NCBI GenBank assembly: GCA_965644265.1
Contig: OZ286459.1
Location: 144,398,001-144,462,000 of the forward strand
DNA length: 64,000 bases
Source: Glycera tridactyla
Taxonomy: Eukaryota
Reading direction: 5' to 3'
How positions within the stretch are numbered: the first letter of the stretch is position 1; each line of letters opens with the position of its first letter. A model generated the notes under the pieces. That model was not told where the DNA came from, searched no databases, and saw nothing but the letters and a program-made list of their open reading frames with translations. Positions 2,769 to 29,136 of this stretch are shown piece by piece. A program made the translations under genes and the position numbers.

Positions 2769-2835
<67 letters not shown>

Positions 2836-2840
2836 GTATA
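2769..2840. repeat. (TA)n microsatellite at the end of the PLE
   Basis: Directly visible TA dinucleotide run. Confidence 0.95.
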
Positions 2841-4150: not shown

Positions 4151-4728
4151 ATGTTCACCAAGTTCATAGTTGGGGTGATACATTTTTTCTATCGTAGAAG
4201 GACCTACGAAGACTTCAGTGATCATTTATCCAAACATGATACAGTTCTGTTGCTGGTCACTTTCTGTGGCGTCATTACATGGGTGATGACACTTAGCAGT
4301 GCTATTAGGTGCTGGTGTGATGATCAGTTCATCGACGAATTCAACAAAGATATTACTTCTTGGGTGGACTACGTGCACGGTTATTGTTGGGTAAGAAACA
4401 CCTACTATATACCACTAGAAGACCCAATTCCAAGCGCTGGGATACAGGATTCGGATAAACATATGGTTATCTATTACCAGTGGGTGCCTCTTTTACTCAT
4501 TGGACAAGCCTGTCTCTTCTACTTACCATCACTCATTTGGACGGGTTTCAATGGAATGAGGGGTGATAGTTTCGTTAGTCTTTGTGAATATTCGCAGACA
4601 TACAAGCAAACTGTAGAAAGTGACAGGAGAGTGATGTACCTTGAAGCCATTCGTCGTCAAATGGTTCATCTCATGGGTCATTCGACTCGCAAAAAGTGCC
4701 CAGGTCACTGTGAACCGACTCGTGGAGG
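4151..4728 (+). CDS. Innexin variable 5' coding exon A (divergent): N-term, TM1, EL1, TM2, cytoplasmic loop
   Basis: Innexin motifs AIRCWC, GYCWVRNTYY, YYQWVPLLLIGQACLFYLP. Donor GG|GTGAGT after 4728 is phase 2, in frame with the exon at 26718. Confidence 0.8.
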
Positions 4729-5355
4729 GTGAGTCATTTTCATTTGTAGAACCAATGCAGATATCTTAAATACAGCCAGACCTCCACCAAAGGCTACCTA
4801 TCTAAGAGGCCCACTTTCATCCGTTACAGTGCTATGAATATCTATACAAGGTGGGTCCTTGAAATCTGGAAAATCGATATATTTATATTGCACCTTTGGC
4901 CCTTTGAAAGCCTTCGAATTTAATTACCATTTCTGGGAAATGCCTGACCTTTTGTATTTGACCTGGAATATCAATGGATCCAAGATGATTTCAGTCACAA
5001 CCATGGAGTATATATCCATATATCCTCTTTGAAACTGAAAACTCGATTAACTCTCATTGACATCCAGCTATCCAGTCCTGAAAGTGTAGCCTTATTGGAT
5101 CTATGGAGAATTTTCTTGCGAATTCTCTTATACGAAAATCGTCATTTATCAGATTATCCGTGTGGTACCTGGATCTAGTGTCTAGTGTCAGAAGAATTAC
5201 ATCTCTCATTGAACCTGGGTAGATAGGTAACTGAAGCCATTCAATCTGGTGATCATCTCGTTCTTGTAGCAATTTCCCAAACTACGCAGCTGTTCCGAAT
5301 AGTGTCGTTGCTCACATAGAGTAGTCCACTCATATCCACATGATTAGGTTGTAAT

Positions 5356-5698
5356 GAGATACCGTAGTTGGGCCATCAAGTGAAATAAGACTTATTCTAT
5401 GACTACAATCGAGACTGAAGCTCATTCTGGTTGGATGATCGAAATACCGTAGATGGACCATCAAGTGAAATAAGACTTATTCTATGAAAACAATCAAGAC
5501 TGAAGTTCATTCTGATTGGATGATCGAAATACCGTAGTTGAACCATCAAGTGAAATAAGACTTATTCTATGACTACAATCGAGACTGAAGCTCATTCTGG
5601 TTGGATTAACGAAAAACCATAGTTGGACCGTCAAGTGAAATAAGACTTATTCTATGAATACAATCAAGACTGAAGCTCATTCTGGTTGGATGATTGAG
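5356..5698. repeat. 85-bp tandem repeat, about 4 copies
   Basis: C(A/G)TCAAGTGAAATAAGACTTATTCTATG recurs at 5374, 5459, 5544 and 5629. Confidence 0.9.
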
Positions 5699-6000
5699 AT
5701 CACGAGTGATATCAAGAGTGCATCATGTTGACATGACTGGCGTGTAATGTGGTTGAAATAGTCGAATTACTATTCAAATAGTTGAGAAGAACTATCTCAT
5801 TGGTCTTTGAGTCAGCCGATGAGTGCCTTGGTGCTTTCCTTATCGTATGAGGTGACCATCGAAATTCAATGTAGGCTTTCCCAACTCATGTGATTTGTGG
5901 CTCGAAAGCAAGGAAATCGCAGGTCCATCACGCACTAATTCAGTTGGTCTGTCTGAATGGTCCGGTCCGTTCGTCTGTCTGTCTGTCTCTCTGTCTGTCC

Positions 6001-6326
6001 GTGAGTATATTTGGAATGCCCTCCCTCCTAGTATTATAGGGCGGACAGACATGTCTGCCTCCAAAAAAGGTGCCACGGCCTTTCATGAGGCAATGGAATC
6101 TCCTATTTAGACATTGAGTCAAGTGGATCCTTCCTGACATATATCTGTATCGTATTACTAAATATCCCTTTTTTCTTTTGATATGTATATGTATGTGCTA
6201 TGTATGTTTGGTATTACATGTGTATCACGTGTTTCCTCTCTATATATGTTCACTTGAATTGGGAAAATATAGACATAATAGACCTCCCCGGGAGAGAATA
6301 AATACTTTTCAATCTCAATCTCAATC
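6001..6326 (+). mobile_element. 5'-truncated L2/CR1-type LINE 3' end
   Basis: Translates as IWNALPPSI (typical LINE ORF2 C-terminal WNxLP), followed by a 3'UTR, AATAAA at 6297 and a (TCAATC)n tail. Confidence 0.6.
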
Positions 6327-8544
6327 TTAACAGCCGTTCATCATTATGGTGATGGTGGTGTGAATATCTGCAACAGGAAAAGCCGAGTCCTGCCGTGAGT
6401 TCAGTGATGTATTTTCACCGGAATTTTTAAACTTTTATTTGTAATCGCCAGCGAACTCAACTGATGACTGTTGAGACTGAGTCTCGTGATGTATCATCTG
6501 AAAGTTGATGAAGATGAAAAGATTTCAGAAAGGCATTTCACATCAAATAACCATTTCATGAACAACCACATATTCATAAAGTTATGTCCATGAAAATATT
6601 CATTCGATTTATCCTCTCAGATCACTGCAGTGCACGGGGAGTGTCAGCTTCTGCGTTCATCATAGGGACTCATTAGTGACTGGACTGGTGTGTCACTATA
6701 TATTCGCAGTGCATGAAATAGGCAGGATGTGCGCGAGTATGTATCACTGCACTTTTTCAGAAATTGGGTTCGCGTTTGACAAGATCGGAGGATATACTTG
6801 GATGTGACGAACTGATGTCACATCAAGAAAAAGTCCAATGATATATGTATGTACGAATGTAACACAAACGTCACCCATTGGTGACATGGGTATTATTTCA
6901 CTGTCTGAGCATGAAGGAAGAGCTTTATGGTCTAGGCCACGCGAATAGATGTTCAAAAATTCCCCCGAAGTATTCTAAATCATTCATGCATAGCGTTTGC
7001 TTTTTCTTATATGGGTTTCTTCAGATGTACCTACTAAAATGCTGATTCAGAGCACCCGGAGCGGTTATCCCACTTTTGTACCTGATTATGAGAAGATCAG
7101 GGGTACGAATTGAACACCTATTCATGATGCATTAGCTGTCGAATGATGCAAAATTCTTTGTTCAAAACACTCAGGAGGGGATGTGCTGACAAGCGAATCT
7201 CCCACATGCCTGGTATAGCCGCCAATGACGCTAAATGGTGTTGAGTTGCACCGCCAACTAGCGTCGTTGGTGAGTACTAGGCTGATCTCCCTCGCCACCG
7301 GGTATCGCAGATGAAAAGCAAAAACTCAATAATGTAAATACATAATGGAGCAATCACTCCCACCATGCATGCATTATACATCACAGTTTCACTTGCGTTT
7401 GATCTCCTGCATTGGAATATATAGGATGAATGCTAAGACCATGTGATAAAGGAGTACAAAAATAGATGAATGATGATCTTGTAAAACCTTTGCGATCCTC
7501 CTTGGCGACATTGCGACATTGAGCCCAGCGCCCAGATCTTGTGGCAGTCGATTATCCATTACATAGTGTTCCCAGTACTTCACGTATGGGAGACTCATCA
7601 CTCGGTGTTACTCGATTGCAATCATCCCACGCCAGTTTCTGACATGCTCATCAGAACCTGCTGTGAAAACATTACAATCGATCATCAGTACCAGTCTGGC
7701 TGTATCCATTTGAATACATGCACAAAATGTCACTTTGCCTTCAACTGTTTTTACTGCAGACAATCGGTTGGATCACATATCATAGTGGTATCGAATTCAG
7801 TAATGGAGGGAAGGCAAACACCATTTCTGATTGAAGAGCGTAACCGCACAGATTCATGGATTAGGTGGGCCTTGAAAAGCACATAATTCGAACATGTTGC
7901 TTGGTTAATTCCCTGGTGACTTCTCCACTGTGATGACATTTTGAGTGTGTGATTTCCGCTTTATTTCACTTCTCACCTGGCATCTAATATGAGGAGGAGG
8001 AGGAGTCTTATAGTTGTGAATGATCCTACTTACTCCCATTGCATCGATGTCTCAATATAGCCCAGTCTGTGTTCACGAGACGTTAACCAATAAGACAACC
8101 GAACACATGGGGGGGATATTCTAGACTGCATATTGGTAGCTCAATGGTTGTTGTATTGGTTCGCCCTGGAACCGAGCTAATTCCGTATTTTATTGGACGG
8201 TCTGACCTGTCTACAGAAACTATCCCTGTTTTTTCTAGGCAGGTAGTCTTTGTAGAGAGTTCTTTCAGTGTGAAAATTACAATAATGTGGAGAATGTGTT
8301 TGCTGTAGAGAGTCACAGCTCCGTAGGGTCTCCCGAGCGGTTTGGACTGCATTATTATCCATGTCATCACGATACATACTATTGAAATGCACGTTTTATT
8401 GTCGAAAACCTATCAACGACTCGTGAAAAAAACTGGAAAAGAGGGATTGAATTTGGATTGATCTGATTCACCTACATACACATTTATTCTAATCTTGGCT
8501 CAGATTTGCCCAGCCCGATGACTGACAATCAATGCAATTGATAT

Positions 8545-8649
8545 TACTACTGCTACTGCTGCTCCCGCCGCCACCACCACCACCACCACCACTACTACTA
8601 CTACCACTACTACTACTACTTTTCCACTTTATACTTTATGCTACTACTT

Positions 8650-8697
<48 letters not shown>

Positions 8698-8815
8698 ACA
8701 ATAATGATAATAATAATGCTGATAAAAGTAATGATAATGATAGTGATAATGAAATAGTAATAATGAAATAGTAATGGTGATAATAATTACAATCATGATG
8801 ATAATAGTAAATCAT
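8545..8815. repeat. Compound trinucleotide microsatellite (CTA/CCA/ATA)n
   Basis: Directly visible; it explains the low-complexity ORF 8532-8771. Confidence 0.9.
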
Positions 8816-9714
8816 ATAGCACCAATATCCATAGAAAGCTCAGAGGCAATTCGCAAGCGAAACTTACATTTCAACAAGACTCAGTATAGTCATGGTATAG
8901 TATATCAGTATCTTCTTTTTTCTCGTTGTTGAGGTTTTATTCTGTAAAATCAATCACAAGAACACATGCGCAATCCCGGAAGCAAACACTCTTTCGGCTT
9001 GCTCCCTACGCCAACATGCATACACAATCCACGCACGCACACACTCACGCACACACATATATATGCTAGCAATCTGGAGGGAATCTAGATACATTTGTTC
9101 GTCTAGAAAACACTTGTCATACCTTTCGCAGGTACCCGGATTTGCAACAGGATCTTGACGTAATGCATGTCGAAGCATCAAACAGGATGTCGACATTGAA
9201 CATGAGAGACTCACTAATGACTGTTCACTACTGATTGTTCACTACAGAATACTCCAATCCTATTGAGATTCCAATGTAAACGGAGATGTTCTTCCAGCGT
9301 AAATATTCTACTATGTACAAAGTATAAACTTCCGCTGAAAATATAGAGTTTTTATCCACAAGAAATGAGCTTTGGCCATGGGGGACTTTGGGGATTCTTG
9401 ACACGCCTTCGTGACTTTCCTGCATCAATCAAGTAGGCTAATTCATCAATCAAGCATTCAATCGATCAATCAATCAATCAATCAATCAGTCGGTAGGTCA
9501 ATCATTCCTAATTCATAATTCTTGATAAGATTTATGTTTTACGGAATCAAAACACACACTGAAGTACTGCTTGACATAGCGGACACTAACTGTCGTAGTT
9601 CAAACTGGCGCTGAAGCCTGATGCAATGAAGAAAATGACATCATAGCGATAATGAAAAATCAAGCAAGGTTGATGTTGTTGCAAATACTGTCCGATAATC
9701 GCAATATAGGCCGA

Positions 9715-9850
9715 TGTCGCTGCGCATGTGCGTCACCGAGAATGACGCAATAGAATTACCACGAGACACTGCGAGACATTACGAGGTGTCCAGCATCAAG
9801 GGGAAGGTCACATCGGTGACCTACCCGGCGGTTCTGACCAATGAGCACGC
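9715..9850 (+). promoter_or_regulatory. CpG-rich promoter-like patch, candidate promoter for innexin isoform B
   Basis: NRF1-like TGCGCATGTGCG at 9721 and CCAAT at 9838, about 3 kb upstream of exon B. Motif-level evidence only. Confidence 0.25.
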
Positions 9851-12800
9851 TGCACTCAAAACAATATGTCGCCTCGGTCTAGGTAGATAGATCCATGTCA
9901 TGAAAATGCATGTATGTCCGTGTGGCGAGTTTGTGGATGAACCACAATGCGACGCAAGCTATGCATGTGTTATAGGGTGTAAATGTTTAATGGTTTAGGA
10001 TGGAGAATGGGTCGAGTCTCTGTAGCAAGCCCCCCCCCCCCCCCCCCACCACCACCACCACCACCAAAACCTACACACATTGGCTGGTCGCTAAAATCAC
10101 GAGCGAGAGGTGCAGATACACTGCGCTCCAGAACACCACACCACCACCGACGCTACACTCACCACGTACACACCCGTTCTTCCTCCAAGAGCGTCACGGT
10201 TTGTGATTTCTGTGAGATGCCCCCATCACGGCTGAGTGACGTTCTGGGTGAATGTAGAGTGCGCTAGAGGATGCAGCCATTCAAGCATATTCTAACTTGA
10301 GCAGCGTACCCCCTCTCAGTAGCAGCCCATCTCTACACAAATCGCGACCCCCTCACGCCGGATTTGAGCAGGACACTATATACCACTAGTCGCGAATGGA
10401 AGTCAGCTACAGATCTGACTATATGGAATAGTTCTATGGTATTACCCAGGATATCTAACTCCAGAATCCCATTTCAGTCATTCGGGTGAATTGTACGAGT
10501 CACACAAGGATGGTGTGAAACCCCGTGGATATATTCTACCCCTCTACACAGTGGGGGTTACCTACATAGGATTGAAATCAGAATAGCGCATTCCACGGAA
10601 CATGCTGATGTTCTTATTGTGGTAAAACAGCGGAAGTTGTCATTTCAGTTATGAACCATCTTTAAGAATGGATAAACTACTCGGTATTCTGATCTGATTT
10701 CTGAGTTACGCACGCGTAATTCCTATATTGGTGCCGATAAACAAATGAAGCAATTCATATACATGTATATATGTGTATATGATAATGTGCCGGGTTTAGC
10801 TATCAATTTTGACTTCCATGCGTTGATCAAGAGCCTAATTTGACACTCAAGAAAATATTGGATGCGCCAGACGTTCTGTTTTGAGGGCATTTGTAAAGGC
10901 GTGGGGAGTGACACGGATGTTTGTGTCATTGGTTTGTGTGTGAATTTCTTTTGTGTCTGTGCTCACTTGTGGATTCCAATATGAAATATACCGATAATGA
11001 TATTGGTGACCTGCTTGTAGTCACAAACAAACACTAGAAGACAAACAGAAGGGTCATTCTCCCCTTCCCCTTGAAAGTGATCTCAGAACACAATGGCGGA
11101 CGATTAGTGCCTCGCACCACCGAGAGGTGACGCTAGGGGCCGGCTTGCCACAATAATGAATTTTAGCGTTCAGTCCGTTCATTCAAGAAAATCCCCCTTC
11201 ATTGAAGATATAACTGCGTTGTCCTTACAGTGAACAGTCTTTAAGTACATCTGATTGTTTTGAGCGACTTTTACAAGCAAGATCGAGTATACCGATTTTT
11301 ATCAACTATTGATTGATTGATTGAGTATGGCTTGACGTCTCTTCAATCCAGGCAGGGTTATTCGAGAGTGGGAGGCTTCCTCTATGTACACCCGGGGTCA
11401 GAAATGAGGTCCTCGGCTATTTCGCTGGGTTTATCGGGAAATCCGGCTGTTTTCCTCAATGAGAAAGAAATGAGAAAATGCCTTTCACCCCTCACTGACA
11501 TTCGATTACAATGACGCCGATAGAATCCTGCATGGTCTACCTTACTTGATTTACACAGCGGACGATGTCATATCGTGTATCTAGTTTAGCGGGCAGTCGT
11601 CGTGAATTGCCTGAGGGTGCGAGGTCGAGTAGCTGCGGAAAAGGTCAATTTCACCCACCCCCAGTCTTGCTAGGCACTGGACATCCTATATCCAGTTGCA
11701 CTGACCTGATTAGTTTTCATTACTCAACCTGAGTATTTTGATGGTACCAGTTCTTTTGTGAAACGTTCCCTTGCACCAGAGGGAAAACGCCCCTATCTGG
11801 CATAGCTGATCAGGTTCAACACCAGTGATATCACCCGTGTGTTGATGCCAGAACCCTATGTGCTATACATTGGGTTACATGAGTCAGTATTTTCCAGGAG
11901 CTCCTGATTCGAGTCGCAATAAAAAAGGCTATATCGGTGGAAAATGTAGTAAAAACACTGACACTGAATTCATTCCAAGCTGCATGAGATCCCGAAGTTC
12001 TGATGGAAAAATCGGATTAATGACTGCTTAAAGTCACTCCTCGTCTACATGTTAAGCATGTAGTAGAGATGGGGTTTATGACATCATGTTACTAGGATCT
12101 GATAGTCTTGCTAGCCCCTCCTAATTTAGTAACTGCTACAAATATAGAAAAATATGACAGACTAATGAAGTGTCATCTACCGGTGACTTAGTAGTACTGA
12201 AGTGTCATCTCATGGTCACTACCAATAACCTCCAACAATATTTTAATCGTAATCCAAATATCATCTCATCTGAAACGATGCAATTGCATTCAATTGTCAT
12301 TACCACCCATCTGCTTGGCAGATGGTGATTCCTGGAAATCTGCCTGTCCTGCGCAGATGGAAGGTCGTCACTTCCCAACTTTTCGACAGCACATTTTCTA
12401 CGGACAATCATATTTTTGTGTCGGGATATTTAGTGGGGTGTAATCTTGTACACCTCACCAAGGTTACCTGTCAACTCACCCCAATGCAAGCTCGCCCCAC
12501 TGGCTACTGAACCAGTTCGCTCCTGTACAAGCTCACACCATTCCTCACTCGCCCCATGACCAACTCGCCCCATAGGCTTCATACAATGGCTTTCAGCTCA
12601 CCTGATCACTATGAAATACTTGCGTAATCGATAGAATATCCTAGTTCACATTTTACGAATGTCCTTGAAATTGACCAGATGTACATATCCATTCCATTTG
12701 TTCAGCACAAGCATCAGGGCAACTGTTGACATCAAACCTTGAAGGTAACCGAAATATCTTGGTCCATGCCTCCTCTCACAATTATCTATGATTACAGGAA

Positions 12801-12897
12801 AATGAGGTTGATTGAAGGGAGAAGCAGAACGTGAAAAGACTGTTTAGACATTTGAACTAGTACTGACTTTTGATACCTGCTAAGAGACAATACCATC

Positions 12898-13478
12898 ATG
12901 GAAAAGCTCGTGGATGTTGTACGTAAGATAGGGTCGGGGGAGAAGAATGATGATGACACCGCCGATCGTCTATCTAACCGCTATACCGTCATGCTCATCG
13001 TCGTCTTCGCGGTCATCATCAGTGCTCAGATGTACGTGGGCAGTCCCGTTACATGCTGGGTTGACAAACACTTCACTGGCCCCTGGACCAAATACACCAA
13101 TGACTACTGCTGGGTGAAAAACACCTACTATCTACCCTACGAGGAGCCTATACCCGAGGAAGGTATACCTGAAAGTGATAAACGTATGATACCCTATTAT
13201 CAGTGGGTGCCCTTTATCCTGGCGCTACAGGCCTTCCTCTTTTATGCACCCAGTGCATTCTGGCATTCTCTCAATCAGGGAGGTGGAGTGGACGCCGATA
13301 GGATTTTGCAGTTGTGTAACGGTTTCGAGAAGAAAGTCGATAAAAAAGTGAGAGAAACGACTTTGAATGCCATCCGTACTATGATGCATCGTTTTCTTGG
13401 CTCCCGGAAAGCTGCACGCAACAAGAAGGTATCTCTCAAAGAATCCATCTCGGAAAATAGGAATATGGGATGGCGAAG
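12898..13478 (+). CDS. Innexin variable 5' coding exon B
   Basis: DDDTADRLSNRYTV, YVGSPVTCW, YCWVKNTYY, YYQWVPFILALQAFLFYAP. Strong start context CATCATGG. Donor AG|GTGGGT after 13478 is phase 2, giving ...MGWRR|FGCYL. Confidence 0.92.
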
Positions 13479-13619
13479 GTGGGTATCGTACGGAGCATTC
13501 AATCAACAATCCAATTTGTCTGTTTGGATGTCAACCCTGTCCTTTACAATGTGCATGAATAATACTGGTATATTCAGATGTGCAGTTATGGTATTTCTAC
13601 ACATCAGCTAGAGATGCTC

Positions 13620-13918
13620 NNNNNNNNNNNNNNNNNNNNNNNNNNNNNNNNNNNNNNNNNNNNNNNNNNNNNNNNNNNNNNNNNNNNNNNNNNNNNNNNN
13701 NNNNNNNNNNNNNNNNNNNNNNNNNNNNNNNNNNNNNNNNNNNNNNNNNNNNNNNNNNNNNNNNNNNNNNNNNNNNNNNNNNNNNNNNNNNNNNNNNNNN
13801 NNNNNNNNNNNNNNNNNNNNNNNNNNNNNNNNNNNNNNNNNNNNNNNNNNNNNNNNNNNNNNNNNNNNNNNNNNNNNNNNNNNNNNNNNNNNNNNNNNNN
13901 NNNNNNNNNNNNNNNNNN
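13620..13918. other. Assembly gap (299 N); further gaps at 15999-16282, 18294-18484 and 41021-41172
   Basis: N runs of non-round length, mostly flanked by microsatellites. Confidence 0.99.
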
Positions 13919-16900
13919 CGCCGCCACCACCAACACAGCAACAACATCAACAACAACAATCACCTTTCGGCGTTGCTATCAAAGTTGCATCCCTACCCAT
14001 GTCCATTGCAAAGGACATCACAATATAGCAGTATGGCGTGACGTCAAATCGAAACCAATGCTGCAATCAAGTATGGTCACCCTCACCAACCACCGCTGCT
14101 GCCACCACCAACACCAACACCACCAACACCAACACCAACACCACCACCACGGCAACAACAACCCACCCCATATCCATAAACAAGTGTGATGACTTTTATA
14201 ATGTTACTCCATGAAAATGATCTGGGTGTTCAAAATGCTTGACCTGAAAGAGTTTTAAGGTCGAGTCCGATTTGTTGATTGTTTGGTTAGATTTAACGTC
14301 CTTCAATCTCCTTGGCTTATATCAGACTGAACAATTGAAAATGGTGAAGAAAGGAGGCATGCAGCCAGGGGTTACCCCCAACTCTTCGCGATGGACATCA
14401 GTGGTTCTCTCACGTCCTTACTGGAAGACTCCCATACACACGGGCGGGCTTTGTTATCCCAGTCGGCATGTACTGGGTTCCAATTGTTAGATGCATTTTC
14501 AGAGAATATATTAGTAGTCACAGAAACTAGTAGCTAAGCGCCACAAAACATTTTTACTCAGGTTGATGGTTGCTCCTCTTCTTCAACATCCCATGATGAA
14601 CTCACGGATATTTGCTTTTTCATAAGATGGTGTACAAACAAGACGTGAGTCGACATATTTATTTGAGGTTCGACAATACCATCCAGGTATTCCATCTTGA
14701 ATATAGAGAAAAGCTGAGTCATTGCATGTGCGACATGTGGAATTCGTGAACACAAAGCATTGCAGAATACTCAGTCCATCATCCATTATTTATTGATCAC
14801 ACAGCCCAGCAGCCTCATTACTGTTCCTCATTGTGACGTCACAATCGGTTGCCATTGACGATTCCTCCAAATATTCCTATAAATCTCATGCATTTCACCA
14901 GTCGGGTTATCCTGTGTATGTTCTGAGTTATTGTAGGTATGGAAAAGTTTCAGTTTATCTTACTGAGCTGTGTCCCCAATCAGCCAAGGATTGGAATCAA
15001 GAGTTTCCTATGTCTGACGGTAGTTTATTTGATATTTTGTATAATTCTACAAGCTCATCGAAGGGTGCCTGCACCAAGTGAGATGCAAAATGACTATAAT
15101 CTGGAGACGAATATTCAGCTGTGTTTACTTATAAACCTTTCACTAGAGTTGGTGAAGGTGTAAAAAAAGCATGGAGTGTTGGGTTACTCCTGTTAGACGT
15201 TTGTCAGGCAGGATCTGGCCTACATAACATCGCAAACATGCTGGACTTGAAGTCTTATATGTACCAGATGATTCAGCCCACAACACCGTGATCTTAGAAG
15301 ACGGACTGTATGCCCATCCGTTACTACTAATAGGGTGTCACCCTTACTGCATCAACAAGTCATGCCACGCCAAGAGTGACTTAGTGAAGACAAATCAGAC
15401 ATGTGGTATTGTAATTCAAGTCATTGTCGATTCTCATGCTGAAGTTTCTCCGAGTCAACCATCACTACTAATAAGACTCATTGTATACCTCCGCAGGTCA
15501 CTAGATTTCTGATTTCATGGCATATGATGGTTTTGTTCAATATTGATGGGTGTCTGCTATATTATACGAGATTGTAATCTATATAGAACACAGGAGGAGA
15601 GGGCGCTAATGCTTAGTGTGTGACCTTCACGCAGGGTGTTGGATCAGATTGCAGGGCGACCCCTGCTGTTTGATGCCTTCTTACGTATACAGTTCTTCAC
15701 CGAGGTCACATATGTGACTAAGTAGGTCACGACACATACACTCTGGTAAGAATACGACGCAATACCCCACCCCACCCCACCCAGTCTGTCAACGTCCTGT
15801 GATACATGAGTGAGCCCATCATAGATGTTATAGCATGCTATACCATCTATGATCCCATTGTAAACGTTCTGATCACCAACTTGTGATTTTTGTCAAATAT
15901 GGGGAAGGTTTGAACCCCACGAAAAAGATGTGAAGTGCCCCTGATCCCTCCGAGGAAAGGCTGCCATAAAATGCACGTTATCATCGTCATCGTCATCGNN
16001 NNNNNNNNNNNNNNNNNNNNNNNNNNNNNNNNNNNNNNNNNNNNNNNNNNNNNNNNNNNNNNNNNNNNNNNNNNNNNNNNNNNNNNNNNNNNNNNNNNNN
16101 NNNNNNNNNNNNNNNNNNNNNNNNNNNNNNNNNNNNNNNNNNNNNNNNNNNNNNNNNNNNNNNNNNNNNNNNNNNNNNNNNNNNNNNNNNNNNNNNNNNN
16201 NNNNNNNNNNNNNNNNNNNNNNNNNNNNNNNNNNNNNNNNNNNNNNNNNNNNNNNNNNNNNNNNNNNNNNNNNNNNNNNNNNGCTGGCAGCGTTGTCTGT
16301 CTGGCTGGCAGCGTTGTCTGGTTGTCTGTCTGTCTGTCTGAATAACATCGGTGATATTTTACTTTTCTTGAGTCCTTCTCCAGCCTCTACAAATCAGGGG
16401 TTCAGAATTCAGAAGCAGCCAATGGATGGCATATGGCATGATATTGGATGCTATGTATTCATATTTTGAGATACCATATCCCAGATACGATAACCATTTG
16501 TTGGTCGCCCCACTCCTCCTCCAAAGGCTTCTGGGCATCTATCCCCCAACCCAACCCCATCCCCTTGTCTAATATTCGGCGTCTGGAGGTGTCGAATCTA
16601 GGCAAGAGTTTGACGACCTCATCTGGTTTGAGTTTCTTGGCAAGTGGTGTGACTGGGTGCTAATATCAGGGACTGTTCTGCTACCCTGTGTAGTTCTCAT
16701 TTGTACCAGCCACTTGAACCAATTCTGTCACCATTCCGGGGTGAAAACTGATAAACTTTTGGCTTTGATGTCCTTCAGACAGGTGAAGCGAGATTTTGAC
16801 ATGTCCTCGATAATTTCACCTGTCCGCCGGCATAAATGGTAATCATAGACTAAATGATGGTAAGGTACCTTCACCTAGGGCAGCTAGTCTGATGAAATCA

Positions 16901-17360
16901 TCCGCTTTAACATGAAATCCACCCGCATGTAGGATAGCACTTGCCGGAGAGGCCTGCTTCATTATTCAGTGATTTTCAAAATGACTGACTGTATTCTTGG
17001 ATGGAACATAAGTGGGCCAGCCCAGGTGAACTCTTGTGGTTGATTGGGTGGTTGGTTGTTTGTTTATGAATCTACTGAGCACCATCTTTGATATATTGAG
17101 ACGCCCATGCAATGAACATGAGTGGTTTCATTCGAGATTCCTTCCTCTGAACCCCCATCCGACGGTGAAGAATATATGAATTTCACAGACACCCAAGAAA
17201 ACATTTGACCAACGTGTGAACCTGCGAACTTGGGACTCATTTACATGACCTTGATTAGGTCAGGTATTGTAGCCATTGTGTAATGCCGTGATCATGGGAA
17301 ACATTTTTGGGCCTCCACTTAGTCGACTGGAAATAGTGAATGCCACTGCTGTCTGTTATA

Positions 17361-17500
17361 CAGTAGAACCTGTATTGAGCGACCACTTTATTCAGCAACC
17401 ATCTGTCTGGAGTCGCCACTTTCTTATATCCCGCCGAGGTATTTTTCACTGTAATCAGCCTGTTTTAAGCAACCACCTAGCTGTCCTGAGCAACCGCTTA
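17361..17500. mobile_element. Degenerate Tc1/mariner-type MITE relative (one TIR); similar remnant at about 55144-55235
   Basis: TA-CAGTAGAACCTG start and internal GACCAC/AACCAC repeats resembling the reverse of the 22400 MITE. Confidence 0.55.
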
Positions 17501-17719
17501 CTCATTTTCCGGGCATGGTTTCTGAATCCAGGTCCTGCTGTATGCCAGACAGTTGAAACCCGTGGCATAGAGTAGTATGGTAGGTGACTGAATGTTTAGC
17601 CTAAACTTTAGGAAAAGGGAGTTCACAGTAGGGCTGACGAATCGAATACAGCAGGCAGTTACGTCAGTGAAGGAGAGGGTCTCCAAATGGCTCAACTCAC
17701 ACGGATTCCTCTTCAAAAT

Positions 17720-18040
17720 AGTCTGACTATTATTAGAAACACGCCGGCTCGGCTAAATGTCGGTTTCCTTGGTGAGTGGTCGTGAACGCAGTGGACCGTG
17801 ACGTTAAATCATTCTCACACTCACTAAAAGTAGAAATGCGCAGCGGTTGGTTTCCGCTGGAGATGGATGGTCACCTGACTGGGAGTTTTGGTGAAGCTGC
17901 GGGCGACAGGCGGCTGTACTCTTGCCAACTGTGGTGATGATTAACAATGGGTCTAGTATGCAAAGATACAAGCCCCGACGTCCGGGACGCCATTATTGGG
18001 CCTCAGCCAATCAGAAAGTGTGACATCTGCTAGGGAGGCT
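17720..18040 (+). promoter_or_regulatory. CpG-rich promoter-like patch, candidate 5' non-coding exon/promoter for innexin isoform C
   Basis: CpG enrichment, donor-like TTG|GTGAGT at 17771/2, GCCAATCAG at 18006. Motif-level evidence only. Confidence 0.25.
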
Positions 18041-19760
18041 ACTCTTCATTATTTATCATCCATCTATTCGATTACCTAATGATCCATTCATGCCAGCTCA
18101 TCGACAGTTTTCGATTCAAATGTACTGGCAGATTTCACTTTTTTACACCCCACAGGGGACGGGGGCTGGTCATTACACTTGTCTCCAGATTTGAAAACCT
18201 CAGTCACTATGGCGTCTCAATGAAAACAATTGTTCCTGAGGTGACCATACTGAAGTCTTCAGTACATCGTTTCTTCATTGTGGGGAATCACCANNNNNNN
18301 NNNNNNNNNNNNNNNNNNNNNNNNNNNNNNNNNNNNNNNNNNNNNNNNNNNNNNNNNNNNNNNNNNNNNNNNNNNNNNNNNNNNNNNNNNNNNNNNNNNN
18401 NNNNNNNNNNNNNNNNNNNNNNNNNNNNNNNNNNNNNNNNNNNNNNNNNNNNNNNNNNNNNNNNNNNNNNNNNNNNNNNNNNNNCGTTCGTTCGCTCGTT
18501 TGAGTTTACTGGATTGCGTATACTGAGATCTCCAGATCTATGAACGCTGGACCATGGAAGAAGAGGGGCTTTCATGGCTGGACACTGTCCTTTGCTGGCT
18601 CACTCTCACACACCCTGAATATGTGGTGTTGAGTAACCAGAAATAGTGTCAAAAAGTTGAAGAATCCTGCAAATCAGAGACACCTTTACATACATCAATA
18701 TACGATGTGATTTGAGTGTGGTGGCTGAGGTGTCTCCTGGCATATGATAGTGGTGGAAAAGTGGTGGTGGCGGCGGCCGCGGCGATGGGGATGACGATAG
18801 ACATTATTGTCATCAAGATCATTTGAGTGTGGTGGCGGATATGGCAGTTATGTCCGCAAGATGCCTTTGGTTGGTCGGTTGATTCATCTAAGTCGCATGA
18901 AAACAACCTAGGCTGTAGTGAGCCGCAACCCAGTGCACGCTGACTGGGAAATCGAAGGCATGGCAGTCTATTTCCACGTGCACACGTAAAAGACCCACTG
19001 CTGTGATCCACAAAGAGCAGGGATTGCCCCCAGCAACGGTGCCTCGTTTCTTCAGCATGTTCAATTTTTCAGTCTAATTGAATCCAAAATGTTTGAAAAG
19101 ACGTTAAACCAATCAGTCTGTGTGCAGACGCACATACAATGACTATGGCTGAGATCATTCAAGACTCCTCCTCCTCCCCCCAGTTACTTCTCCCCCAGGT
19201 TCCCAAACGGTGGATGGAATTTTAAGGTCCTCAACAGACAGCCAAAGGTTGCTTTCTGGGTGGCACCAGTGCAGCGTTCTGTTTCTGACTTGAGACCGGT
19301 ATGTGACCAGTCATGATGAATGGTTATAATTCTGTGTGGGGTGCCACCCCTGTGTATGACACCTACATGGTTCCGCGACCTCAGTCGCCAGAGAAAGTCG
19401 ACTGTTCTCACTGCTTTCACAGATGCGGATCTCTTACAAAAACGCCTATCTACATCCTTGTTAAGCATTCCTTTATTCTGAGGGTGATTGGATCCTATCC
19501 CAGCAGTAGGTGGGCTCGTTGACAAAGTGTTCCATTGCTCACCAAGGTGGCAAAATCAACGGAGCTCATTGTTTCGCCGAAGGACTTCACCCACCACGCC
19601 ATTCCGGATTGTTTCACTGGCCACTGACTGCCAATCTGTCATACATCCATCATGGACACATACCATACCTGACTATGGACATTTTATTAGCATAACAGAG
19701 TAGTTGGGATATTATATTTTGTTATTTATCAGCATTAATCAAAATACGTAATCTGCAAAG

Positions 19761-20332
19761 ATGCATGATATTGTGAAGGTTTTCACGGATGTGGAAGATT
19801 CGGTGCAACGTGATGATGACTTTACTGACCGTCTTAATAGTCGTTATACTGTGATAGTACTGGTGGTGTTTGCCCTGGTGGTCAGCATGCACCAATATGT
19901 GGGAGATCCCATCGATTGCTGGGTACCACAGCATTTCACTGGCGCTCACACCAAATACGCCGATTCCTACTGCTGGGTACGAAACACCTACTATCTCCCT
20001 TTCGATGACCACATTCCCGAAGCGGATGATGAAAGTGTGCGAAAAATGTTACCCTATTACCAATGGATTCCCTTCATCCTTCTTGCACAGGCTTTGATGT
20101 TTTATATCCCAAATGGCTTGTGGCACTCCTTAAATCAGACAGCTGGCGTGGATTCTGATAGTATCCTGTCCACAGCGCAGACATTTAATAGTACAGCACA
20201 GGCCGATAATCGTGATGATCTTCTGATGATTATACGTAATCAGATGGACAGGTTCCTCCGAAATCGCAAAAAGGGTGGTCGGAAAGGCGACTGGAAAGGT
20301 GCATTCGCCAGAAGGGAATTCTCCGGAAGAAG
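19761..20332 (+). CDS. Innexin variable 5' coding exon C
   Basis: DDDFTDRLNSRYTV, QYVGDPIDCWVP, YCWVRNTYY, YYQWIPFILLAQALMFYIP. Donor AG|GTATGG after 20332 is phase 2, giving ...FSGRR|FGCYL. Confidence 0.93.
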
Positions 20333-22399: not shown

Positions 22400-22559
22400 C
22401 AGTCGAACCTGTCTATAAAGACCGCCTTCGGTCGCATAAAAAAGCGGTCTTTATTGGCAGGTGGTCTTTATAGAGAGGTCATTTACTGTTGAAAATACTA
22501 CCACAGTCGCAGCTTAGGTGGTCCTTATAGAGAGGTGGTCTTTAGAGCAGGTTCGACTG
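22400..22559. mobile_element. Tc1/mariner(pogo)-type MITE, 160 bp
   Basis: TIRs CAGTCGAACCTG / CAGGTTCGACTG, flanked by TA on both sides. Confidence 0.9.
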
Positions 22560-23145
22560 TATATGAACTCGTACTGAATGTGTGTGTTGTGACTGTGTGA
22601 AATACGTACAACCTCATGATCGAGGAATCCACTGAGGCTAGGCCGGTCCTTAATTCTGGAGACGGAGAAATCTATATCACAATATTTCAGATAGACTTGC
22701 TGGTCAAAGAGATTACCCTGAATGTGAACGAGTGAGAATATGGTGTTCATTGACAGGAGCCCCCCCCCCCCACACACACACACACGCACGCACACACACA
22801 CGAGCGCGCGCACACATACACACGTGTGCGCACGCTATGTTAGTCAAAAAGTAACACAATGAATAACTGTGAATCCCATATAATCCCACCTCATTGTCTG
22901 TGAGTTGAGGAGACACAGAACGTCCAGTTAACCAAGCGACCCACATCGGAAGTAAGTTAAGGTTGGGAATAAAAAGAAGATTGTTTTTGTACATCGTGTG
23001 AGCTATGTCCGGCATTCGGTCGTGTTCAAACAAAAAGTTATCCCTTGAATGAATGCAACTGTCGAGTTGTGGGTTGACGCCATAGCAGAATACATCATAG
23101 CCGACTCGGATAAACTATGGTTCTCTCTAGCCAGCGACACAAGTA

Positions 23146-23306
23146 CAGTCGATCCTGTCTATAAAATACCACCTTCGGTCGCACCAAAAATGGTCTTTGA
23201 TGACAGGTCATTCACTGTTGAAAATACTATCACGATTGCAGCTCAGGATGGTCTTTATAGACAAGTTGTCTTTATAAAGAGGTGGTCTTTGGAGCAGGTT
23301 CGACTG
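23146..23306. mobile_element. Same MITE family, second copy
   Basis: TA-CAGTCGATCCTG ... CAGGTTCGACTG-TA; the interior matches the 22400 copy. Confidence 0.88.
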
Positions 23307-26300
23307 TAGTTTGCGCAAATTCAGTGAAATTTATTTCGACAGGTGATCTAAAATTTCATCACTCATAGATATCTGGAATATATTTCTGAGACATGATTCC
23401 GTCACACTTTTCGTATCACAAGTGACTTGTGCACGTTGTGTGCATGAATTCTTTGAACGAAGTGCCAGTCTGGCTTCATCCAGTCAGATATGCACACAAA
23501 CCTTACTTTGTCTTTGGTTCGGATGTCCCGTCCTTTCAAATTTCAGTACTTCAAATAAAACTATGAATGGGAATGCCTCGAATCCTGTGATAGCCTGGTA
23601 ACGACGAGAGGATATCTTCTTTCATGATTTAGTCTACAGTCCTACAGTCGACCGTTTCCAGTCATCTGTCGAGTTGGTATAAGATGAGTGCGTCGGAATG
23701 TCGGGAGGGGACGCTTGTAACCGGAAGTGGGATTACACGCATTCAGTAACGACTGTAACTACTTGTATATGTAGGTGTTCGAAGGCAAATACCTGCAGTA
23801 AGACTCCGTGAGTGTTCATTGGGTATGTATTGTTCGTGAATAGACTGACATTCACAGAAGCCGCGCAGCTTGATGGAGGGGAGAGCTATTTTTTCGGCAT
23901 TCTTTTCGCTGATAATGCCTGTCTTTATATCACCTAATATGCATCAGAGAACTATCCCTACACTGTGAAAGGGTCTTATGTGTCTAGTCTGGCCAAGAGT
24001 ACAGGATACTTGTTCGTCATAGTGGATCGCTATCCTATCAACTTATGCCCTCAGACTCACTGAGAACAGACATAGCTCTTAACAATCCGAACATATTATC
24101 GAATATTTTGCTTCAATGCCCTCAGTATTTTGTCTGATGGACCAGTGCCGGTCCGGTGCTGATCAACCATCACTCTAGTAACCGACCCTTACCAAATGGC
24201 ACCTAGAGTGTCTGTGGATTTCATAAAATTTGGCCTTCTGTTGGGAACCCAGGAGGAGAAGTTTTGCATGATCTCAAACGTTTCCATAGCATGGGCGTCA
24301 CAATATAGCACAATTCGAGCTAAACCACAACTTACCAACCAACCAACCATCACCAAAAGTGAAGATCGCGGGCAAAGAGTGGTGATGATCTCTGTCTACT
24401 GAGTGTGCGAATGTACATAGGCTTTGGCTAAATAACCCTGGTATTTGCTCACCCGACAAACCGTGTCAACAACATGATCATGTGAAAACACCTGAACTAT
24501 ATACTGCTGATATTTGTCTACCTTCTAACACGATTCACTGTGGCAGGAAACACGAGGAGAAACTCCCAGGAAGGAGGCTATGACCCGACACCTATGGGCA
24601 TTGTCCTGTGACCTGCTTCGAGTTGTTGGTCGGCAGGACCAGTTCCATTCTGATGTTTTGGCAGTAGATCAAAATATGAACTCTACCAAATATGACCCAA
24701 ACTATTTGTGTATCTTCAGCCAGAGCCCAAGAGCCTCAGTCGATATAGATTTTCTCCGTTCAGTACGGTCTCAGTTTTCGAAATGTCATTCTTGAAGTTT
24801 GAATCGAGTGCAATAAAGCCCGTATTCAAACGAAGTGAATAAGAATCAGATGCGTCATGTGTAATGTAAACAACTTGATATGTCATCTGAACCCAGGTGA
24901 TGAAACAGCGTGGATTGAGTCTAGACGAGCGTCTCAACACGATAATGCCTGTATGTTGACTATATGTATTGCTATGCATGGGTGGGGTGTATACTATACC
25001 GTTCCACGAGACACCGACCACATCGGTGACATTGTCCCTGGTCATACATTTGGTCTGTATTTCAAAGTGTATGATATCCATGGCGTACTTGGAACTTCAC
25101 TACAAGGATGCCAATCAGTTCGAATGTGGATTAGTGACTACTCTCCTATTTCACGAGTGGTGCTACTCTGCAGAATCAAGATATTTTCTAATCATCGATT
25201 CCACAAGTACCATGGGCTACCGTGTGAATCACTATTTCCCCAATAAGTAAGCAATGAATATTATTGTATCAAAGGAGACGGGCTGATCCCCACGCCTTTA
25301 AAATTCGTGTGACAAATACCAGAGTCAATCCTTTTGCCCTCTGCCCGGGCCCCCATCAAACATATCGGTATATGTACACAATTATGATTGGATCTCGAGT
25401 ATGAATAAGAATAGAAACAATATCTATGTGAATTACAATTAAAATTAACCTAGCAGTTTACTATGAACTCTTCGAATTCAACAGTGTGGATCCTTCTTCG
25501 ACACAAAGTTAATGTAAAGCCCCGCAAGAATGTGGATGTGAACAGGAAACACGGATATTTGATGTCATCAGATCTCCTTCATAGGTTCCTGTATCTACAC
25601 ACCACATACTGCACTTCCCGGAACTTGGTGGTGACTAAATCAACCTTCCTTTCCTAGATTCATTGAGGCATCCAGTTTGTTTTCCCCATCTTGGGTCAAG
25701 GCAAAGACTCTATCATGATAATCATTATAGGGTCTTTGGTTAAGATCGCCATTGCTTGGTGTAAATTGTCATCAGTGTTTTAGCCAGAACTTAACAGGGT
25801 GTCTAAAATAGAGATTCAGCTAACTTTTTAAAATAGATTGTTTGAATCCTCCTCTCTCGTACTTGCATGTGCGTGTGTGCTGATTCCCGAAGAGGGCTAT
25901 CATTTGTGCATGTTTGTAGTCACTTATAATTGCATCACCGCAACCTAGGACCATTGTTTTCAGATCCCCGATAGGCACTAACCACCTCACCCAGCCCTGG
26001 TCGTGTGTAACCCATGTCTGTTTGCTAGTTTTTAATTCAACACTTGGGAACCCACATCTCTCACGTAGTCTGTGACTAGGGCACCTTTATGAAGCATACT
26101 ATAGGCTTCCTGACACCCAAAGTTCATCTTCCTACAAAGACCACATTTGTTGCGTCCGTGAGTCTTTGTAGGCAGGTTGGACTGTATGATGAATCCGACT
26201 TGGAGACGGTCATGAGTGAGTGGAGTACTCTCTCTATCTTCCAATGAACCACCCGGATACAGAATCTGATACCATGTGGATGAAGCTTGCTAATCGGCGA

Positions 26301-26717
26301 TTTCTGATCGAATTTCTACTTCCTTTGAAACTTGCTTGTATTTCCTCCTTGTTTACGCACTGGATGTTCAATTGATGTTCGTTTCCTTGATTCGCTCTGT
26401 AACAGAGGTCCTTGGCAATGTTTATTCTGAGTCTGTCTGCGTCAATATTTTGGAATTATACGTGTAACATCACATGAAACACAGATGTTCCATAATTACT
26501 TGAGCTATACGGGTGGATGATATTATATTCGGTGTCTTCACTTGCGTTAAGCCCCCGTGTAATTGCTTAACGACTGGCGCTAACGCAGATCTCCCTATTC
26601 TTTTTGTAGACAGGTTTGGTTTCTCTCCGATCATATAAGGAAATTCCAGGCAGTCAGTGAAATCAGAGTTTGGCTGCATTGATTAATCACCTACTCGTTG
26701 TTTTTTGTTGTTGACAG

Positions 26718-26951
26718 ATTTGGCTGCTATTTGGTGATCATCTACTGCATCTCCAAGTTTTTGTATCTCGTCAACGTCGTCGGCCAACTCTTCATGCTCA
26801 ACTCTATTCTGGCTCTTGACTACCACATCTACGGAATAGAAGTGTTCAGGTGGATGTTGGATAACTATGACTGGACCACCTCGCCACAGGTGGCCTTCCC
26901 CAGGGTCACCATGTGTGACTTCAAGGTCAGGCGTCTAGGCAACATTCACAG
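26718..26951 (+). CDS. Innexin shared (constant) exon: TM3 and first part of EL2
   Basis: Acceptor TTTTTTGTTGTTGACAG| (phase 2). Encodes FGCYLVIIYCISKFLYLVNVVGQLF...FPRVTMCDFKVRRLGNIH. Donor AG|GTGAGT, phase 2. Confidence 0.95.
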
Positions 26952-28694
26952 GTGAGTAGGGCGTCCTCACGCTCGTGTTGTCATGTCGGATAGGTCTGGC
27001 AACCTCCATATAATCATACGCCGGGGCCATACGTCGCTATGGAGGATAACAGTATTTAGTTGCCGGACTTTCCACCAGGTTATTTCACTCTATAGACACA
27101 AGATGGCATTTTGAGCTGACTATCTATGCCTGTTCCCATCATTACCATAGAAATATGTGTGAATGTGGAATATAATTCCAAGTACTTTTCGGCAATCGGA
27201 ATGATATATCCAACTCAGTAAGTCATTCTCATCAGTATATGTGTCTAATGAAGTACCCAAAATCCACTGAGCATGTCATATGCTTGAACAGTCAGTGCAG
27301 AATGAGGTATTTAATCCTCTGATTTACCGAGAAACCATTATCATGACTTATGAATCTTCAACACTGTCCCTCGAAACAAAATGAATCCACCAGTATGGAA
27401 ATTATGCCTGTTTCTTATCATAGAATTTGATTAAATCATTATACCAGTCATACAAGAAGGGAGAGCAATAATCATTGCTAATACGGTGATGCCAATTCTC
27501 CGAAAATTATCGGAATTCCGAAAATTGGGGTGAAAAATTCAAATTCAGGATTTTCTGAAAACTTGCAGAAAAGATACGTTTGAGATTATGTGAGGGAATC
27601 CAATCATATTTCCGAAAATCTAGATTCTTCTAATTGCCATCTCTGCAAATAGTTGCCAATAGGTGTTACTCTGACCAGCAGGCACCAGACTGAAATGAGG
27701 ATAATGTCAGGAGAAATATCAGGAACCATATGTAAAGATGGTGGACCATCTCCTTCTTATACACGGATTGCAGGAAGAAGAAACCCGGGCCCATTCAGGG
27801 CTTCATATTTTCTGAGAGCTCAGTGGGCCCATATGGTTCAGGAAGTGAAATTACCATGGTTCTAAGTCAAAATTGATGGGACATCTCTTATTCATCACTG
27901 GTTGATATAATCGACATAAATGCTGGGCTAGTGGACCCATGATATGATATATTGAAGAGCCAAGGGGACAGATACGTGGGCCAAGGGCCCATGCCCGCCA
28001 ATAATCTGGAGCTCTACTCATTGACCGATCTTGGTGGGCCAAGAAGCCAGAAATAAGGATTAAGGCCCTGGGCCCATCAACAATCTGAGTATAGGAATCT
28101 CAAACAAATACATGGGATAGAAAAACCCTTCCGGGCATTGAACCAGTGTGAAATTCGAAGTGTTGGCCCCAAGCAGAAAATCTGTAAAAAAAGTTCCATG
28201 TGATGATGTGGCAGATGGTTCCATCCCAATATATTTTTTCTCACGGCCCTTCAGCGGTATATTATGTACTGGGAATACTTTGCATAATATTTCCGCCAGG
28301 CAAGTAGGCATAGGCTATATATCTCCGAGCAAAAGAGTATGAAGTAAAATTGAGAGAACTGAGTAGTCTACGTACAAAGTTGTTGCCTCAATGTGCTTGA
28401 ATCATGCTTGAATATTCCATGTGGCCACTCATAGAATGAATATAATGTAAGTAGAAGGATGCTTCTTTGTTTGAGATTCATTGTTAAGCGTTGCCAGGCT
28501 CCATTCCGAATATTTTGATACATATACATGCTATGCCGAACGAAAGGCATTGGTATGTAAAAGTCTTAAAAGGGTAGAGGTGGATGGATGGGTGGTTGGG
28601 CAAAAAGGCAGACGCGTGGAAGGCCGGTCAAAGACAGACAGACAGACAGACAGACCGAAATACAAATCTGACCCCTCTGTTTGACCTCTTGCAG

Positions 28695-29136
28695 GTATAC
28701 CGTGCAGTGTACTTTACCAATCAATTTGTACAATGAGAAGATCTACATGTTCCTCTGGTTCTGGATGGTGTTCGTTGCCGTGGTAACCGCCGTCAGCTTG
28801 GTGACGTGGATCGCCCGTATTGTGAGCGTCACCGATAGAGAGCGCTACATTCAGAACCACCTCAAGATGATGGGCAAGATCGACAAGAGCGGCAAGGACG
28901 TCGATGACGACACGCGACGTTTCGTACGCTCCTATCTACGTCATGACGGCGTTTTCCTCTTACGTCTAATCGGTCACAACACTAATACGTTGACGGTGAG
29001 TGAGATCATTGGAGCGTTATGGGACAACCGACCCCAGCATCTACGTGCACCGCCCCTCAAGTCAACCCACGAGGAGGACCCCTCTGACCCTGACAGCCAT
29101 CTGCCCCTCAAGCCAGGGGCAGAATCCACTGCATAA
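28695..29136 (+). CDS. Innexin shared terminal exon: end of EL2, TM4, C-terminal tail
   Basis: Acceptor CCTCTTGCAG|. Encodes (R)YTVQCTLPINLYNEKIYMFLWFW...DGVFLLRLI; stop TAA at 29134-36. Confidence 0.95.

What the first reader, a model, noticed from the sequence alone, without database searches (positions are those of the whole stretch)
4151..29136. Innexin locus with three alternative N-terminal-half exons sharing one constant C-terminal half
Seen: exons A, B and C each encode N-term/TM1/EL1/TM2/loop and end at a GT donor in phase 2 just before TM3 (4728, 13478, 20332). The only TM3-EL2-TM4 exons I can find are 26718-26951 and 28695-29136. All three splices are in frame and give 417, 418 and 415 aa innexins. 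No N gap lies between A and B, and the three gaps between B and C (299, 284, 191 N) are nominally too small to hold a 3' half. Known: Drosophila shakB uses alternative 5' exons to make rectifying heterotypic junctions, and clustered protocadherins and UGT1A use variable/constant arrays. Inference: this is an exon-duplication system for diversifying gap-junction subunits, with a larger variable part than shakB. More variable exons may lie upstream of the window.
Basis: partly seen in the sequence, partly recalled or inferred. Interest (0 to 1): 0.92.

Follow-up and report, generated by a model that had tools for sequence, protein, structure and literature searches.

The report
Innexin locus with three alternative front halves
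An annelid-like gap-junction (innexin) gene region holds three intact, selectively maintained copies of the exon for the front half of the protein but only one set of exons for the back half. It therefore probably makes three channel subunits by alternative exon choice, as fly shakB does, but no transcript evidence could be obtained.

Summary
On the + strand there are three ATG-started innexin N-half exons: A 4151-4728, B 12898-13478 and C 19761-20332. Each matches Pfam Innexin positions 1-156 and ends at a phase-2 GT donor. tblastn and profile searches of all six frames find only one TM3-EL2 exon (D, 26718-26951) and one TM4-C-terminus exon (E, 28695-29136) in the 64 kb.

All three joins are open, giving 417, 418 and 415 aa. 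No exon touches a gap. However, A and B lie on one gap-free contig (1-13619) and C, D and E on another (18485-41020), so their linkage depends on scaffolding.

A is very divergent but constrained. It keeps 23 of 25 family-conserved residues, and its profile score is far above neutral simulations. With no back half between A and B, A must skip B to be useful.

Best reading (about 0.5): alternative N-half exons share constant exons, a shakB-like design with a larger variable part. Rivals are back halves hidden or lost in assembly, and recently orphaned relics. Related annelid contigs show only ordinary N-D-E genes. This genome is absent from the protein collection, so splicing could not be tested. 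I class it as a new variant of a known kind, of moderate interest.

The parts
4151..4728 (+). Variable exon A: N-terminus, TM1, EL1, TM2 and cytoplasmic loop (193 codons, phase-2 donor AGG|GTGAGT). It is the most divergent copy.
   Evidence: Pfam Innexin 2-153, E 2.5e-28. Home HMM 158 bits, against 41+-16 for neutral simulations. Keeps 23/25 conserved residues. End branch 3.2 against a median of 0.46.
12898..13478 (+). Variable exon B: the same protein segment (194 codons, donor AAG|GTGGGT). It lies 141 nt before the first assembly gap.
   Evidence: Pfam Innexin 1-156, E 3.6e-43. 40% identical to A and 49% to C. Best outside hit 52-56%.
19761..20332 (+). Variable exon C: the same protein segment (191 codons, donor AAG|GTATGG). 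It is on the same contig as D and E.
   Evidence: Pfam Innexin 1-156, E 1.1e-44. Groups with P0045/P0057 at SH-aLRT 98. The junction ...SGRR|FGCY matches the cDNA-derived P0057 ...SGRRMGCY.
26718..26951 (+). Constant exon D: TM3 and the first part of EL2, the only such exon in the window.
   Evidence: Pfam Innexin 157-233, E 6.5e-21. Single hit. Acceptor with a pyrimidine tract.
28695..29136 (+). Constant exon E: the rest of EL2, TM4, the C-terminal domain and the stop codon, the only such exon in the window.
   Evidence: Pfam Innexin 234-332, E 9.8e-31. Single hit. 85% identical to the ENA ORF P0295.
13620..13918 (.). Assembly gap 1 (299 N), 141 nt after the donor of B. It marks the end of the contig that carries A and B.
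   Evidence: The right flank is a CAA/CCA simple repeat.
15999..16282 (.). Assembly gap 2 (284 N).
   Evidence: Flanked by ATCGTC and GTCT simple repeats.
18294..18484 (.). Assembly gap 3 (191 N). The contig carrying C, D and E starts at 18485.
19714..19732 (+). Candidate 3' splice acceptor 28 nt upstream of the ATG of C (T-rich tract ending in CAG). Weaker candidates end at 12884 (before B) and 4138 (before A).
   Evidence: Read directly from the sequence. Not validated.

Best explanation
This is one innexin transcription region in which three paralogous exons, A, B and C, are used alternatively. Each encodes the N-terminus, TM1, first extracellular loop, TM2 and cytoplasmic loop. Each is spliced from its phase-2 donor to the single acceptor of exon D, followed by exon E (TM3, EL2, TM4, C-terminus). 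The products would be three subunits of 417, 418 and 415 aa that differ in the pore-lining, docking and loop parts but share the back half. The likeliest route is separate promoters or 5' leader exons for each variable exon, as in alternative-first-exon genes. C-D-E is the original gene, orthologous to the cDNA-derived P0057. A and B were recruited either by exon duplication or by loss of the back halves of tandem genes. What is shown: the exon inventory, the phases, and the constraint on A, B and C. What is inferred: the splicing itself, promoter use, and any role in heterotypic or rectifying junctions.
For: There are exactly three N halves and one D and one E in 64 kb on both strands. All three donors are in the same phase at the homologous position and are close to consensus, and all three joins are open. 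The junction residues RR|FGCY match cDNA-derived relatives. The N/D intron position is the usual one in relatives. A and B lie on one gap-free contig with 8.2 kb between them and no back half, so A needs a back half beyond B whatever the gaps hold. A is constrained: it keeps 23/25 family-conserved residues, including both EL1 cysteines and YYQW...P. Neutral simulations down to the same identity give 5.6-5.9 stops, only 1 of 600 stays open, and the profile score is 41+-16 bits (max 104.5) against 158 observed. B and C score like ordinary family members, 230 and 244 bits against a median of 210. No other gene or Pfam domain was found in the long ORFs of the intervals. [quoted passage not shown]
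Against: There is no transcript evidence. This genome is not in the protein collection; the best hit to B is 52-56% identical. The linkage of A/B to C/D/E depends on scaffolding across three gaps, the first only 141 nt after B. No relative showed the same layout: 25 annelid-like contigs are all N-D-E, multi-N gene models are tandem whole genes, and among 108 full-length relatives no pair shares a back half with different front halves. On the ENA contig that carries the C orthologue P0045, the B-like P0009 is followed by its own D- and E-like ORFs, which suggests tandem whole genes as the ancestral state. A sits on a branch about 7 times longer than the median. Plausible acceptors upstream of B and C would complicate a simple first-exon model. 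No shared upstream motif and no docking/selector complementarity was found.
Confidence: 0.5

Rival explanations
1. Assembly artefact. B, and through it A, belongs to a separate gene whose own TM3-TM4 exons lie in the gaps (if their sizes are underestimated), on an unplaced contig, or were collapsed. Alternatively, contig 1-13619 is wrongly scaffolded next to the complete C-D-E gene.
For: Contig I ends 141 nt after the donor of B, and three gaps and two 2-kb contigs separate it from C. A B-like N half in a related genome has its own D/E-like ORFs at +2.2 and +6.8 kb. Ordinary N-D-E genes are the rule in relatives.
Against: The gap sizes look estimated rather than fixed, they total only 774 nt, and none can hold an E-like exon core. 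No partial D or E hit occurs at any gap edge. The gaps are flanked by simple repeats, as is usual for short intronic gaps. Even under this rival, A and B still share one back half, because nothing lies between them on a gap-free contig.
Confidence: 0.22
2. Orphaned relics. Only C-D-E is a working gene. A and/or B are front halves left over from tandem genes that lost their back halves recently. They are not productively spliced and have not yet decayed.
For: A has a very long branch (3.2 against a median of 0.46) and a low profile score (7th percentile). No orthologue of A was found among 1.84 billion representatives; the best identity was 37%. The layout was not seen in relatives.
Against: Both exons are fully open with consensus-like donors in the right phase. 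A keeps 23/25 conserved residues and scores 7 SD above neutral simulations. B evolves at a normal rate. This reading needs two independent recent losses.
Confidence: 0.2
3. Mutually exclusive internal cassette exons. A, B and C are transcribed from one upstream promoter behind a shared leader exon that lies outside the window. One of them is chosen per transcript by a Dscam-like or steric mechanism.
Against: No docking/selector complementarity between the introns after A, B or C and the intron before D exceeds chance (all E>0.5). The acceptor candidates for A and B are weak. A joined to B through 12885 would stay in frame and duplicate the front half, while joins to 19733 run into TAA. Strict exclusion would therefore be needed, and no mechanism for it is visible.
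Confidence: 0.08

Closest known systems
Drosophila shaking-B (shakB / inx8) alternative 5' exons
   Same: It is in the same protein family. Alternative 5' coding exons give isoforms with different N-terminal, TM1 and EL1 parts and an identical remainder. The known consequence is heterotypic, rectifying junctions (PMC5412853, PMC4197764).
   Different: In shakB the shared part starts at the extracellular end of TM2, so about one third of the protein varies. Here TM2 and the whole cytoplasmic loop also vary (about 46%), and each variable part is one large exon. The origin is independent: the relatives here are annelid-type paralogues, not shakB orthologues. The isoforms here are only predicted.
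Clustered protocadherin and UGT1A variable/constant exon arrays (established knowledge)
   Same: A tandem array of large paralogous exons, each with its own start codon and 5' donor, is followed by one set of constant exons with a single acceptor.
   Different: There are only three variable exons, and they are 35-49% identical. No shared promoter element was found. Plausible acceptors lie upstream of B and C. Own promoters were not shown.
Tandemly duplicated whole innexin genes (for example the P0032, P0041 and P0031/L012 loci)
   Same: Clusters of innexin paralogues on the same strand are common, and gene predictors often fuse them.
   Different: In those clusters every front half has its own back half. 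Here there are three front halves and one back half.

Membership tests
Innexin (Pfam PF00876) | Profile match above the gathering score that covers the whole domain once the exons are joined | tested here: met
   A, B and C cover profile positions 1-156, D covers 157-233 and E covers 234-332. All score far above the 25-bit cut-off.
Innexin (Pfam PF00876) | Two cysteines in each extracellular loop and the YYQW motif with proline in TM2 | tested here: met
   The EL1 cysteines and YYQW..P are present in A, B and C. The EL2 cysteines (TMCDF, VQCTL) are seen in D/E.
shakB-type innexin gene with alternative 5' coding exons | Two or more homologous alternative 5' coding exons upstream of one shared set of 3' exons | tested here: met
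   Three N halves, one D and one E in the 64 kb. The donors and the acceptor are compatible in phase.
shakB-type innexin gene with alternative 5' coding exons | Transcripts that join each alternative exon to the shared exons | not testable with these tools
   This genome and its transcripts are absent from the collections.
shakB-type innexin gene with alternative 5' coding exons | Orthology to shakB | not tested
   The nearest relatives are annelid innexins. No tree including arthropod shakB was built. An independent origin is assumed.
Variable/constant first-exon array (Pcdh, UGT1A type) | Each variable exon is a first exon with its own promoter and no functional upstream acceptor | tested here: inconclusive
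   No shared upstream motif was found. Candidate acceptors end at 4138, 12884 and 19732, and the last is good. There are no expression data.
Variable/constant first-exon array (Pcdh, UGT1A type) | A single constant region downstream of all variable exons | tested here: met
   D and E occur only once, downstream of C, subject to the scaffolding being correct.
Dscam-type mutually exclusive exons with competing RNA pairing | A docking site complementary to selector sequences next to each variable exon | tested here: not met
   The best complementary matches are 10-15 nt with E 0.57-9, which is chance level.

The most novel reading that the evidence does not exclude
An annelid innexin locus has kept, under selection, three alternative exons for the whole N-terminal half (N-terminus, TM1, EL1, TM2 and cytoplasmic loop) that are spliced to one constant TM3-EL2-TM4-C-terminal half. 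One gene would then supply three subunits with different pore, docking and gating-loop properties. This would be an independent and more extensive reinvention of the shakB strategy for building cell-specific heterotypic or rectifying electrical synapses.
Probability: 0.45. Interest if true: 0.65.

Novelty: new variant of a known kind. Interest (0 to 1): 0.5.

Why it matters
If the three joins are real, one locus encodes three gap-junction subunits that differ in the parts that line the pore, dock to the partner hemichannel and gate the channel, while keeping the same back half. That would be a natural chimera series for locating the determinants of heterotypic compatibility and rectification. 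It would also show that the shakB solution arose independently outside arthropods, with a larger variable module. If the arrangement instead comes from scaffolding or from orphaned exons, the locus is an ordinary innexin cluster. It would then be a caution for gene prediction in gapped assemblies.

Tried and rejected
- **Extra back-half exons.** I searched for them with tblastn at E<=10 and with N, D, E and DE profile HMMs on six-frame fragments. Nothing scored better than E=0.1.
- **This species' own proteins or transcripts.** None are in the 5.8-billion-protein collection or in the JGI contigs.
- **The same layout in relatives.**
  - The Capitella P0010 locus is an ordinary gene, and P0013 is intronless.
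  - P0031 (L012) is two tandem whole genes. By their domain order, P0032 and P0041 are fused tandem whole genes.
  - P0030 is a model of repeated partial units.
  - All 25 JGI contigs that hold both halves are N-D-E.
  - Among 108 full-length relatives, no pair has the same back half with a different front half.
- **ENA contig ERZ26052378 (859 kb).** It carries P0008, P0009, P0045, a 192-aa innexin ORF and P0350, and is the best lead.
- **Splicing and promoter signals.** No docking/selector RNA pairing, no shared promoter motif and no shared downstream motif was found; all matches were at chance level.
- **Bridging the gaps.** The window self-comparison found no repeat that bridges a gap. B and C share only 236 nt of coding similarity at 69% identity.
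- **Other content of the intervals.** There were no Rfam hits. The eight longest ORFs tested in the intervals gave no Pfam hit above its curated cut-off.
Full report
**The window and the gaps.** The window is 64,000 bases at 42% G+C, with four N runs at 13620-13918, 15999-16282, 18294-18484 and 41021-41172. None of the five innexin exons touches a gap, so no reading frame has to be carried across unread letters. The gaps do divide the locus into contigs. Contig 1-13619 carries A and B. Two contigs of about 2 kb follow (13919-15998 and 16283-18293). Contig 18485-41020 carries C, D and E. Each gap is flanked on at least one side by a simple repeat, and the gap sizes are irregular, which suggests they were estimated by a scaffolder.

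**Checking the observation.** The ORF list and direct reading show three ATG-started open exons on the + strand.
- A is 4151-4728, B is 12898-13478 and C is 19761-20332.
- Their lengths are 578, 581 and 572 nt, so each ends after the second base of a codon.
- The donor contexts are AGG|GTGAGT, AAG|GTGGGT and AAG|GTATGG.

Pfam places A, B and C on Innexin profile positions 1-156, with E = 2.5e-28, 3.6e-43 and 1.1e-44. D (26718-26951) falls on positions 157-233 and E (28695-29136) on 234-332. D and E have acceptors with pyrimidine tracts. Joining each variable exon to D and E gives open products of 417, 418 and 415 aa. The junctions read ...RR|FGCY for B and C, which matches the cDNA-derived relatives P0057 (...SGRRMGCY) and P0001.

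**Is there really only one back half?** tblastn of all five pieces against the window at E<=10 found only the pieces themselves and the mutual A/B/C matches. I then built profile HMMs for the N, D and E segments from 57 full-length relatives and ran them without filters on 3,226 six-frame fragments. The result was three N hits (E = 1.9e-73, 4.2e-69, 3.9e-47), one D hit (3.4e-34) and one E hit (4.5e-50). Everything else had E>0.1. The inventory of three front halves and one back half is therefore solid for the letters that were read.

At the nominal sizes, a D-like exon (234 nt) could hide in a gap. An E-like core (about 330 nt) could not, and no partial hit occurs at any gap edge.

**Are A and B live exons?**
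- A is 40% identical to B and 36-37% to C. B and C are 49% identical. At the DNA level only 236 nt of B and C still align, at 69%. The duplications are old.
- In a tree of N halves, C groups with P0045 and P0057 (SH-aLRT 98). B sits near P0001 and the P0008/P0009/P0014 clade. A sits on an end branch of 3.2, against a median of 0.46.
- I simulated neutral decay of B or C down to 40% identity. This gave 5.6-5.9 stop codons on average. Only 1 of 600 sequences stayed open. The profile score was 41+-16 bits (maximum 104.5), against 158 bits for the real A.
- A keeps 23 of the 25 columns that are at least 85% conserved in the family. These include both EL1 cysteines, YYQW..P, P126 and W130. B also keeps 23 of 25, and C keeps 25 of 25. 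A's score is at about the 7th percentile of 76 independent family members, and B and C are above the median.

A is thus a fast-evolving but constrained innexin front half, not a decayed relic. A very recent loss of function cannot be excluded.

**Consequence.** A and B lie on one gap-free contig with 8.2 kb between them and no back half on either strand. If A is functional, it must be spliced past B to a back half that B (and probably C) also uses. This part of the argument does not depend on the gaps. Whether that back half is D/E depends on the scaffolding, or on nothing being hidden after B.

**How the choice could be made.** Upstream of each ATG there is an AG that could serve as an acceptor.
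- The one ending at 4138 is weak.
- The one ending at 12884 is an AAG with a TACTGAC branch-like site.
- The one ending at 19732 has a good T-rich tract.

Either each variable exon has its own promoter, perhaps with a short private leader exon, or there is a shared leader and mutually exclusive choice. I found no sequence shared between the three upstream regions. I also found no complementarity between the introns after A, B or C and the intron before D beyond chance; the best match was 15 nt at E = 0.57. A Dscam-like mechanism therefore has no support. The eight longest ORFs tested in the intervals gave no Pfam hit above its curated cut-off, and there are no Rfam hits. Nothing points to another gene inside the region.

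**Relatives.** This genome is not in the protein collection. The best hits to B are 52-56% identical, and the named hits are annelid (Capitella, Helobdella, Dimorphilus, and later Hirudo, Paralvinella and Lamellibrachia). A has no match above 37% among the best-scoring hits from 1.84 billion representatives.

Gene models with several N halves turned out to be tandem whole genes or repeats. All 25 JGI contigs that hold both halves are ordinary N-D-E genes with N-D introns of at most about 3 kb. Among 108 full-length relatives, no pair shares a back half while differing in the front half.

The best lead is an 859-kb ENA contig (ERZ26052378). It carries the C orthologue P0045, the B-like pair P0008 and P0009, a 192-aa innexin ORF 9.9 kb upstream of P0045, and an E-tail ORF (P0350).
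- P0009 is followed by D- and E-like ORFs.
- P0008 and P0045 have no flagged back half within 10 kb downstream.
- P0350 has no front half within 10 kb upstream.

The DNA and coordinates of this contig are not available, so the layout stays ambiguous. The P0009 case does suggest that tandem whole genes were the ancestral state.

[quoted passage not shown] Their pairing gives rectifying junctions (PMC5412853, PMC4197764). The locus here would work the same way, with a larger variable module (through TM2 and the cytoplasmic loop, about 46% of the protein) held in one exon, and with three variants. In layout it also resembles the Pcdh and UGT1A variable/constant arrays (established knowledge). Own promoters and the absence of acceptors were not shown.

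**Verdict.**
- All three exons share D/E: about 0.5. That at least A and B share one back half: somewhat higher.
- Back halves hidden or displaced by the assembly: 0.22.
- Recently orphaned exons: 0.20.
- Mutually exclusive cassettes behind a shared leader, as a variant of the mechanism: 0.08.

If true, this is a new variant of a known kind. It would be interesting for gap-junction biology but not categorically new.

Noticed in passing
window 5359-5694: Four tandem copies of an 85-bp unit (90% matches) lie in the A-B interval, about 630 nt after the donor of A.
   Followed up: no
window 38878-40703 and 50556-51612: Two long tandem arrays (self-matches offset by multiples of about 51-55 nt) lie in the region that another note of this scan assigns to an R-spondin gene. 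One of them ends about 320 nt before the fourth assembly gap (41021-41172).
   Followed up: no
window 4728 joined to 12885: If the AAG ending at 12884 were used as an acceptor, the donor of A would join in frame to the ATG of B (GG+A GAC AAT ACC ATC ATG). This would give a doubled front half, the kind of fusion a gene predictor could produce. Joins of A or B to 19733 run into TAA.
   Followed up: partly
ENA contig ERZ26052378 (859,010 bp; proteins P0008, P0009, P0045, P0350): One contig of a related annelid-like genome carries at least three innexin front-half ORFs, including the closest relative of exon C. Two of them have no flagged back half within 10 kb downstream. This may be the orthologous cluster, but its DNA could not be read.
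   Followed up: partly
protein P0030 (1033 aa, representative library): This gene model has a guanylate-kinase fragment followed by four near-identical repeats of a partial innexin front half (period about 260 aa). It is probably a tandem repeat or an assembly artefact in another genome.
   Followed up: no
window 8532-8810: A low-complexity stretch ((ACT)n and related repeats) in the A-B interval translates to poly-L/P/T/N ORFs. It caused the weak spurious TM-like profile hits.
   Followed up: partly
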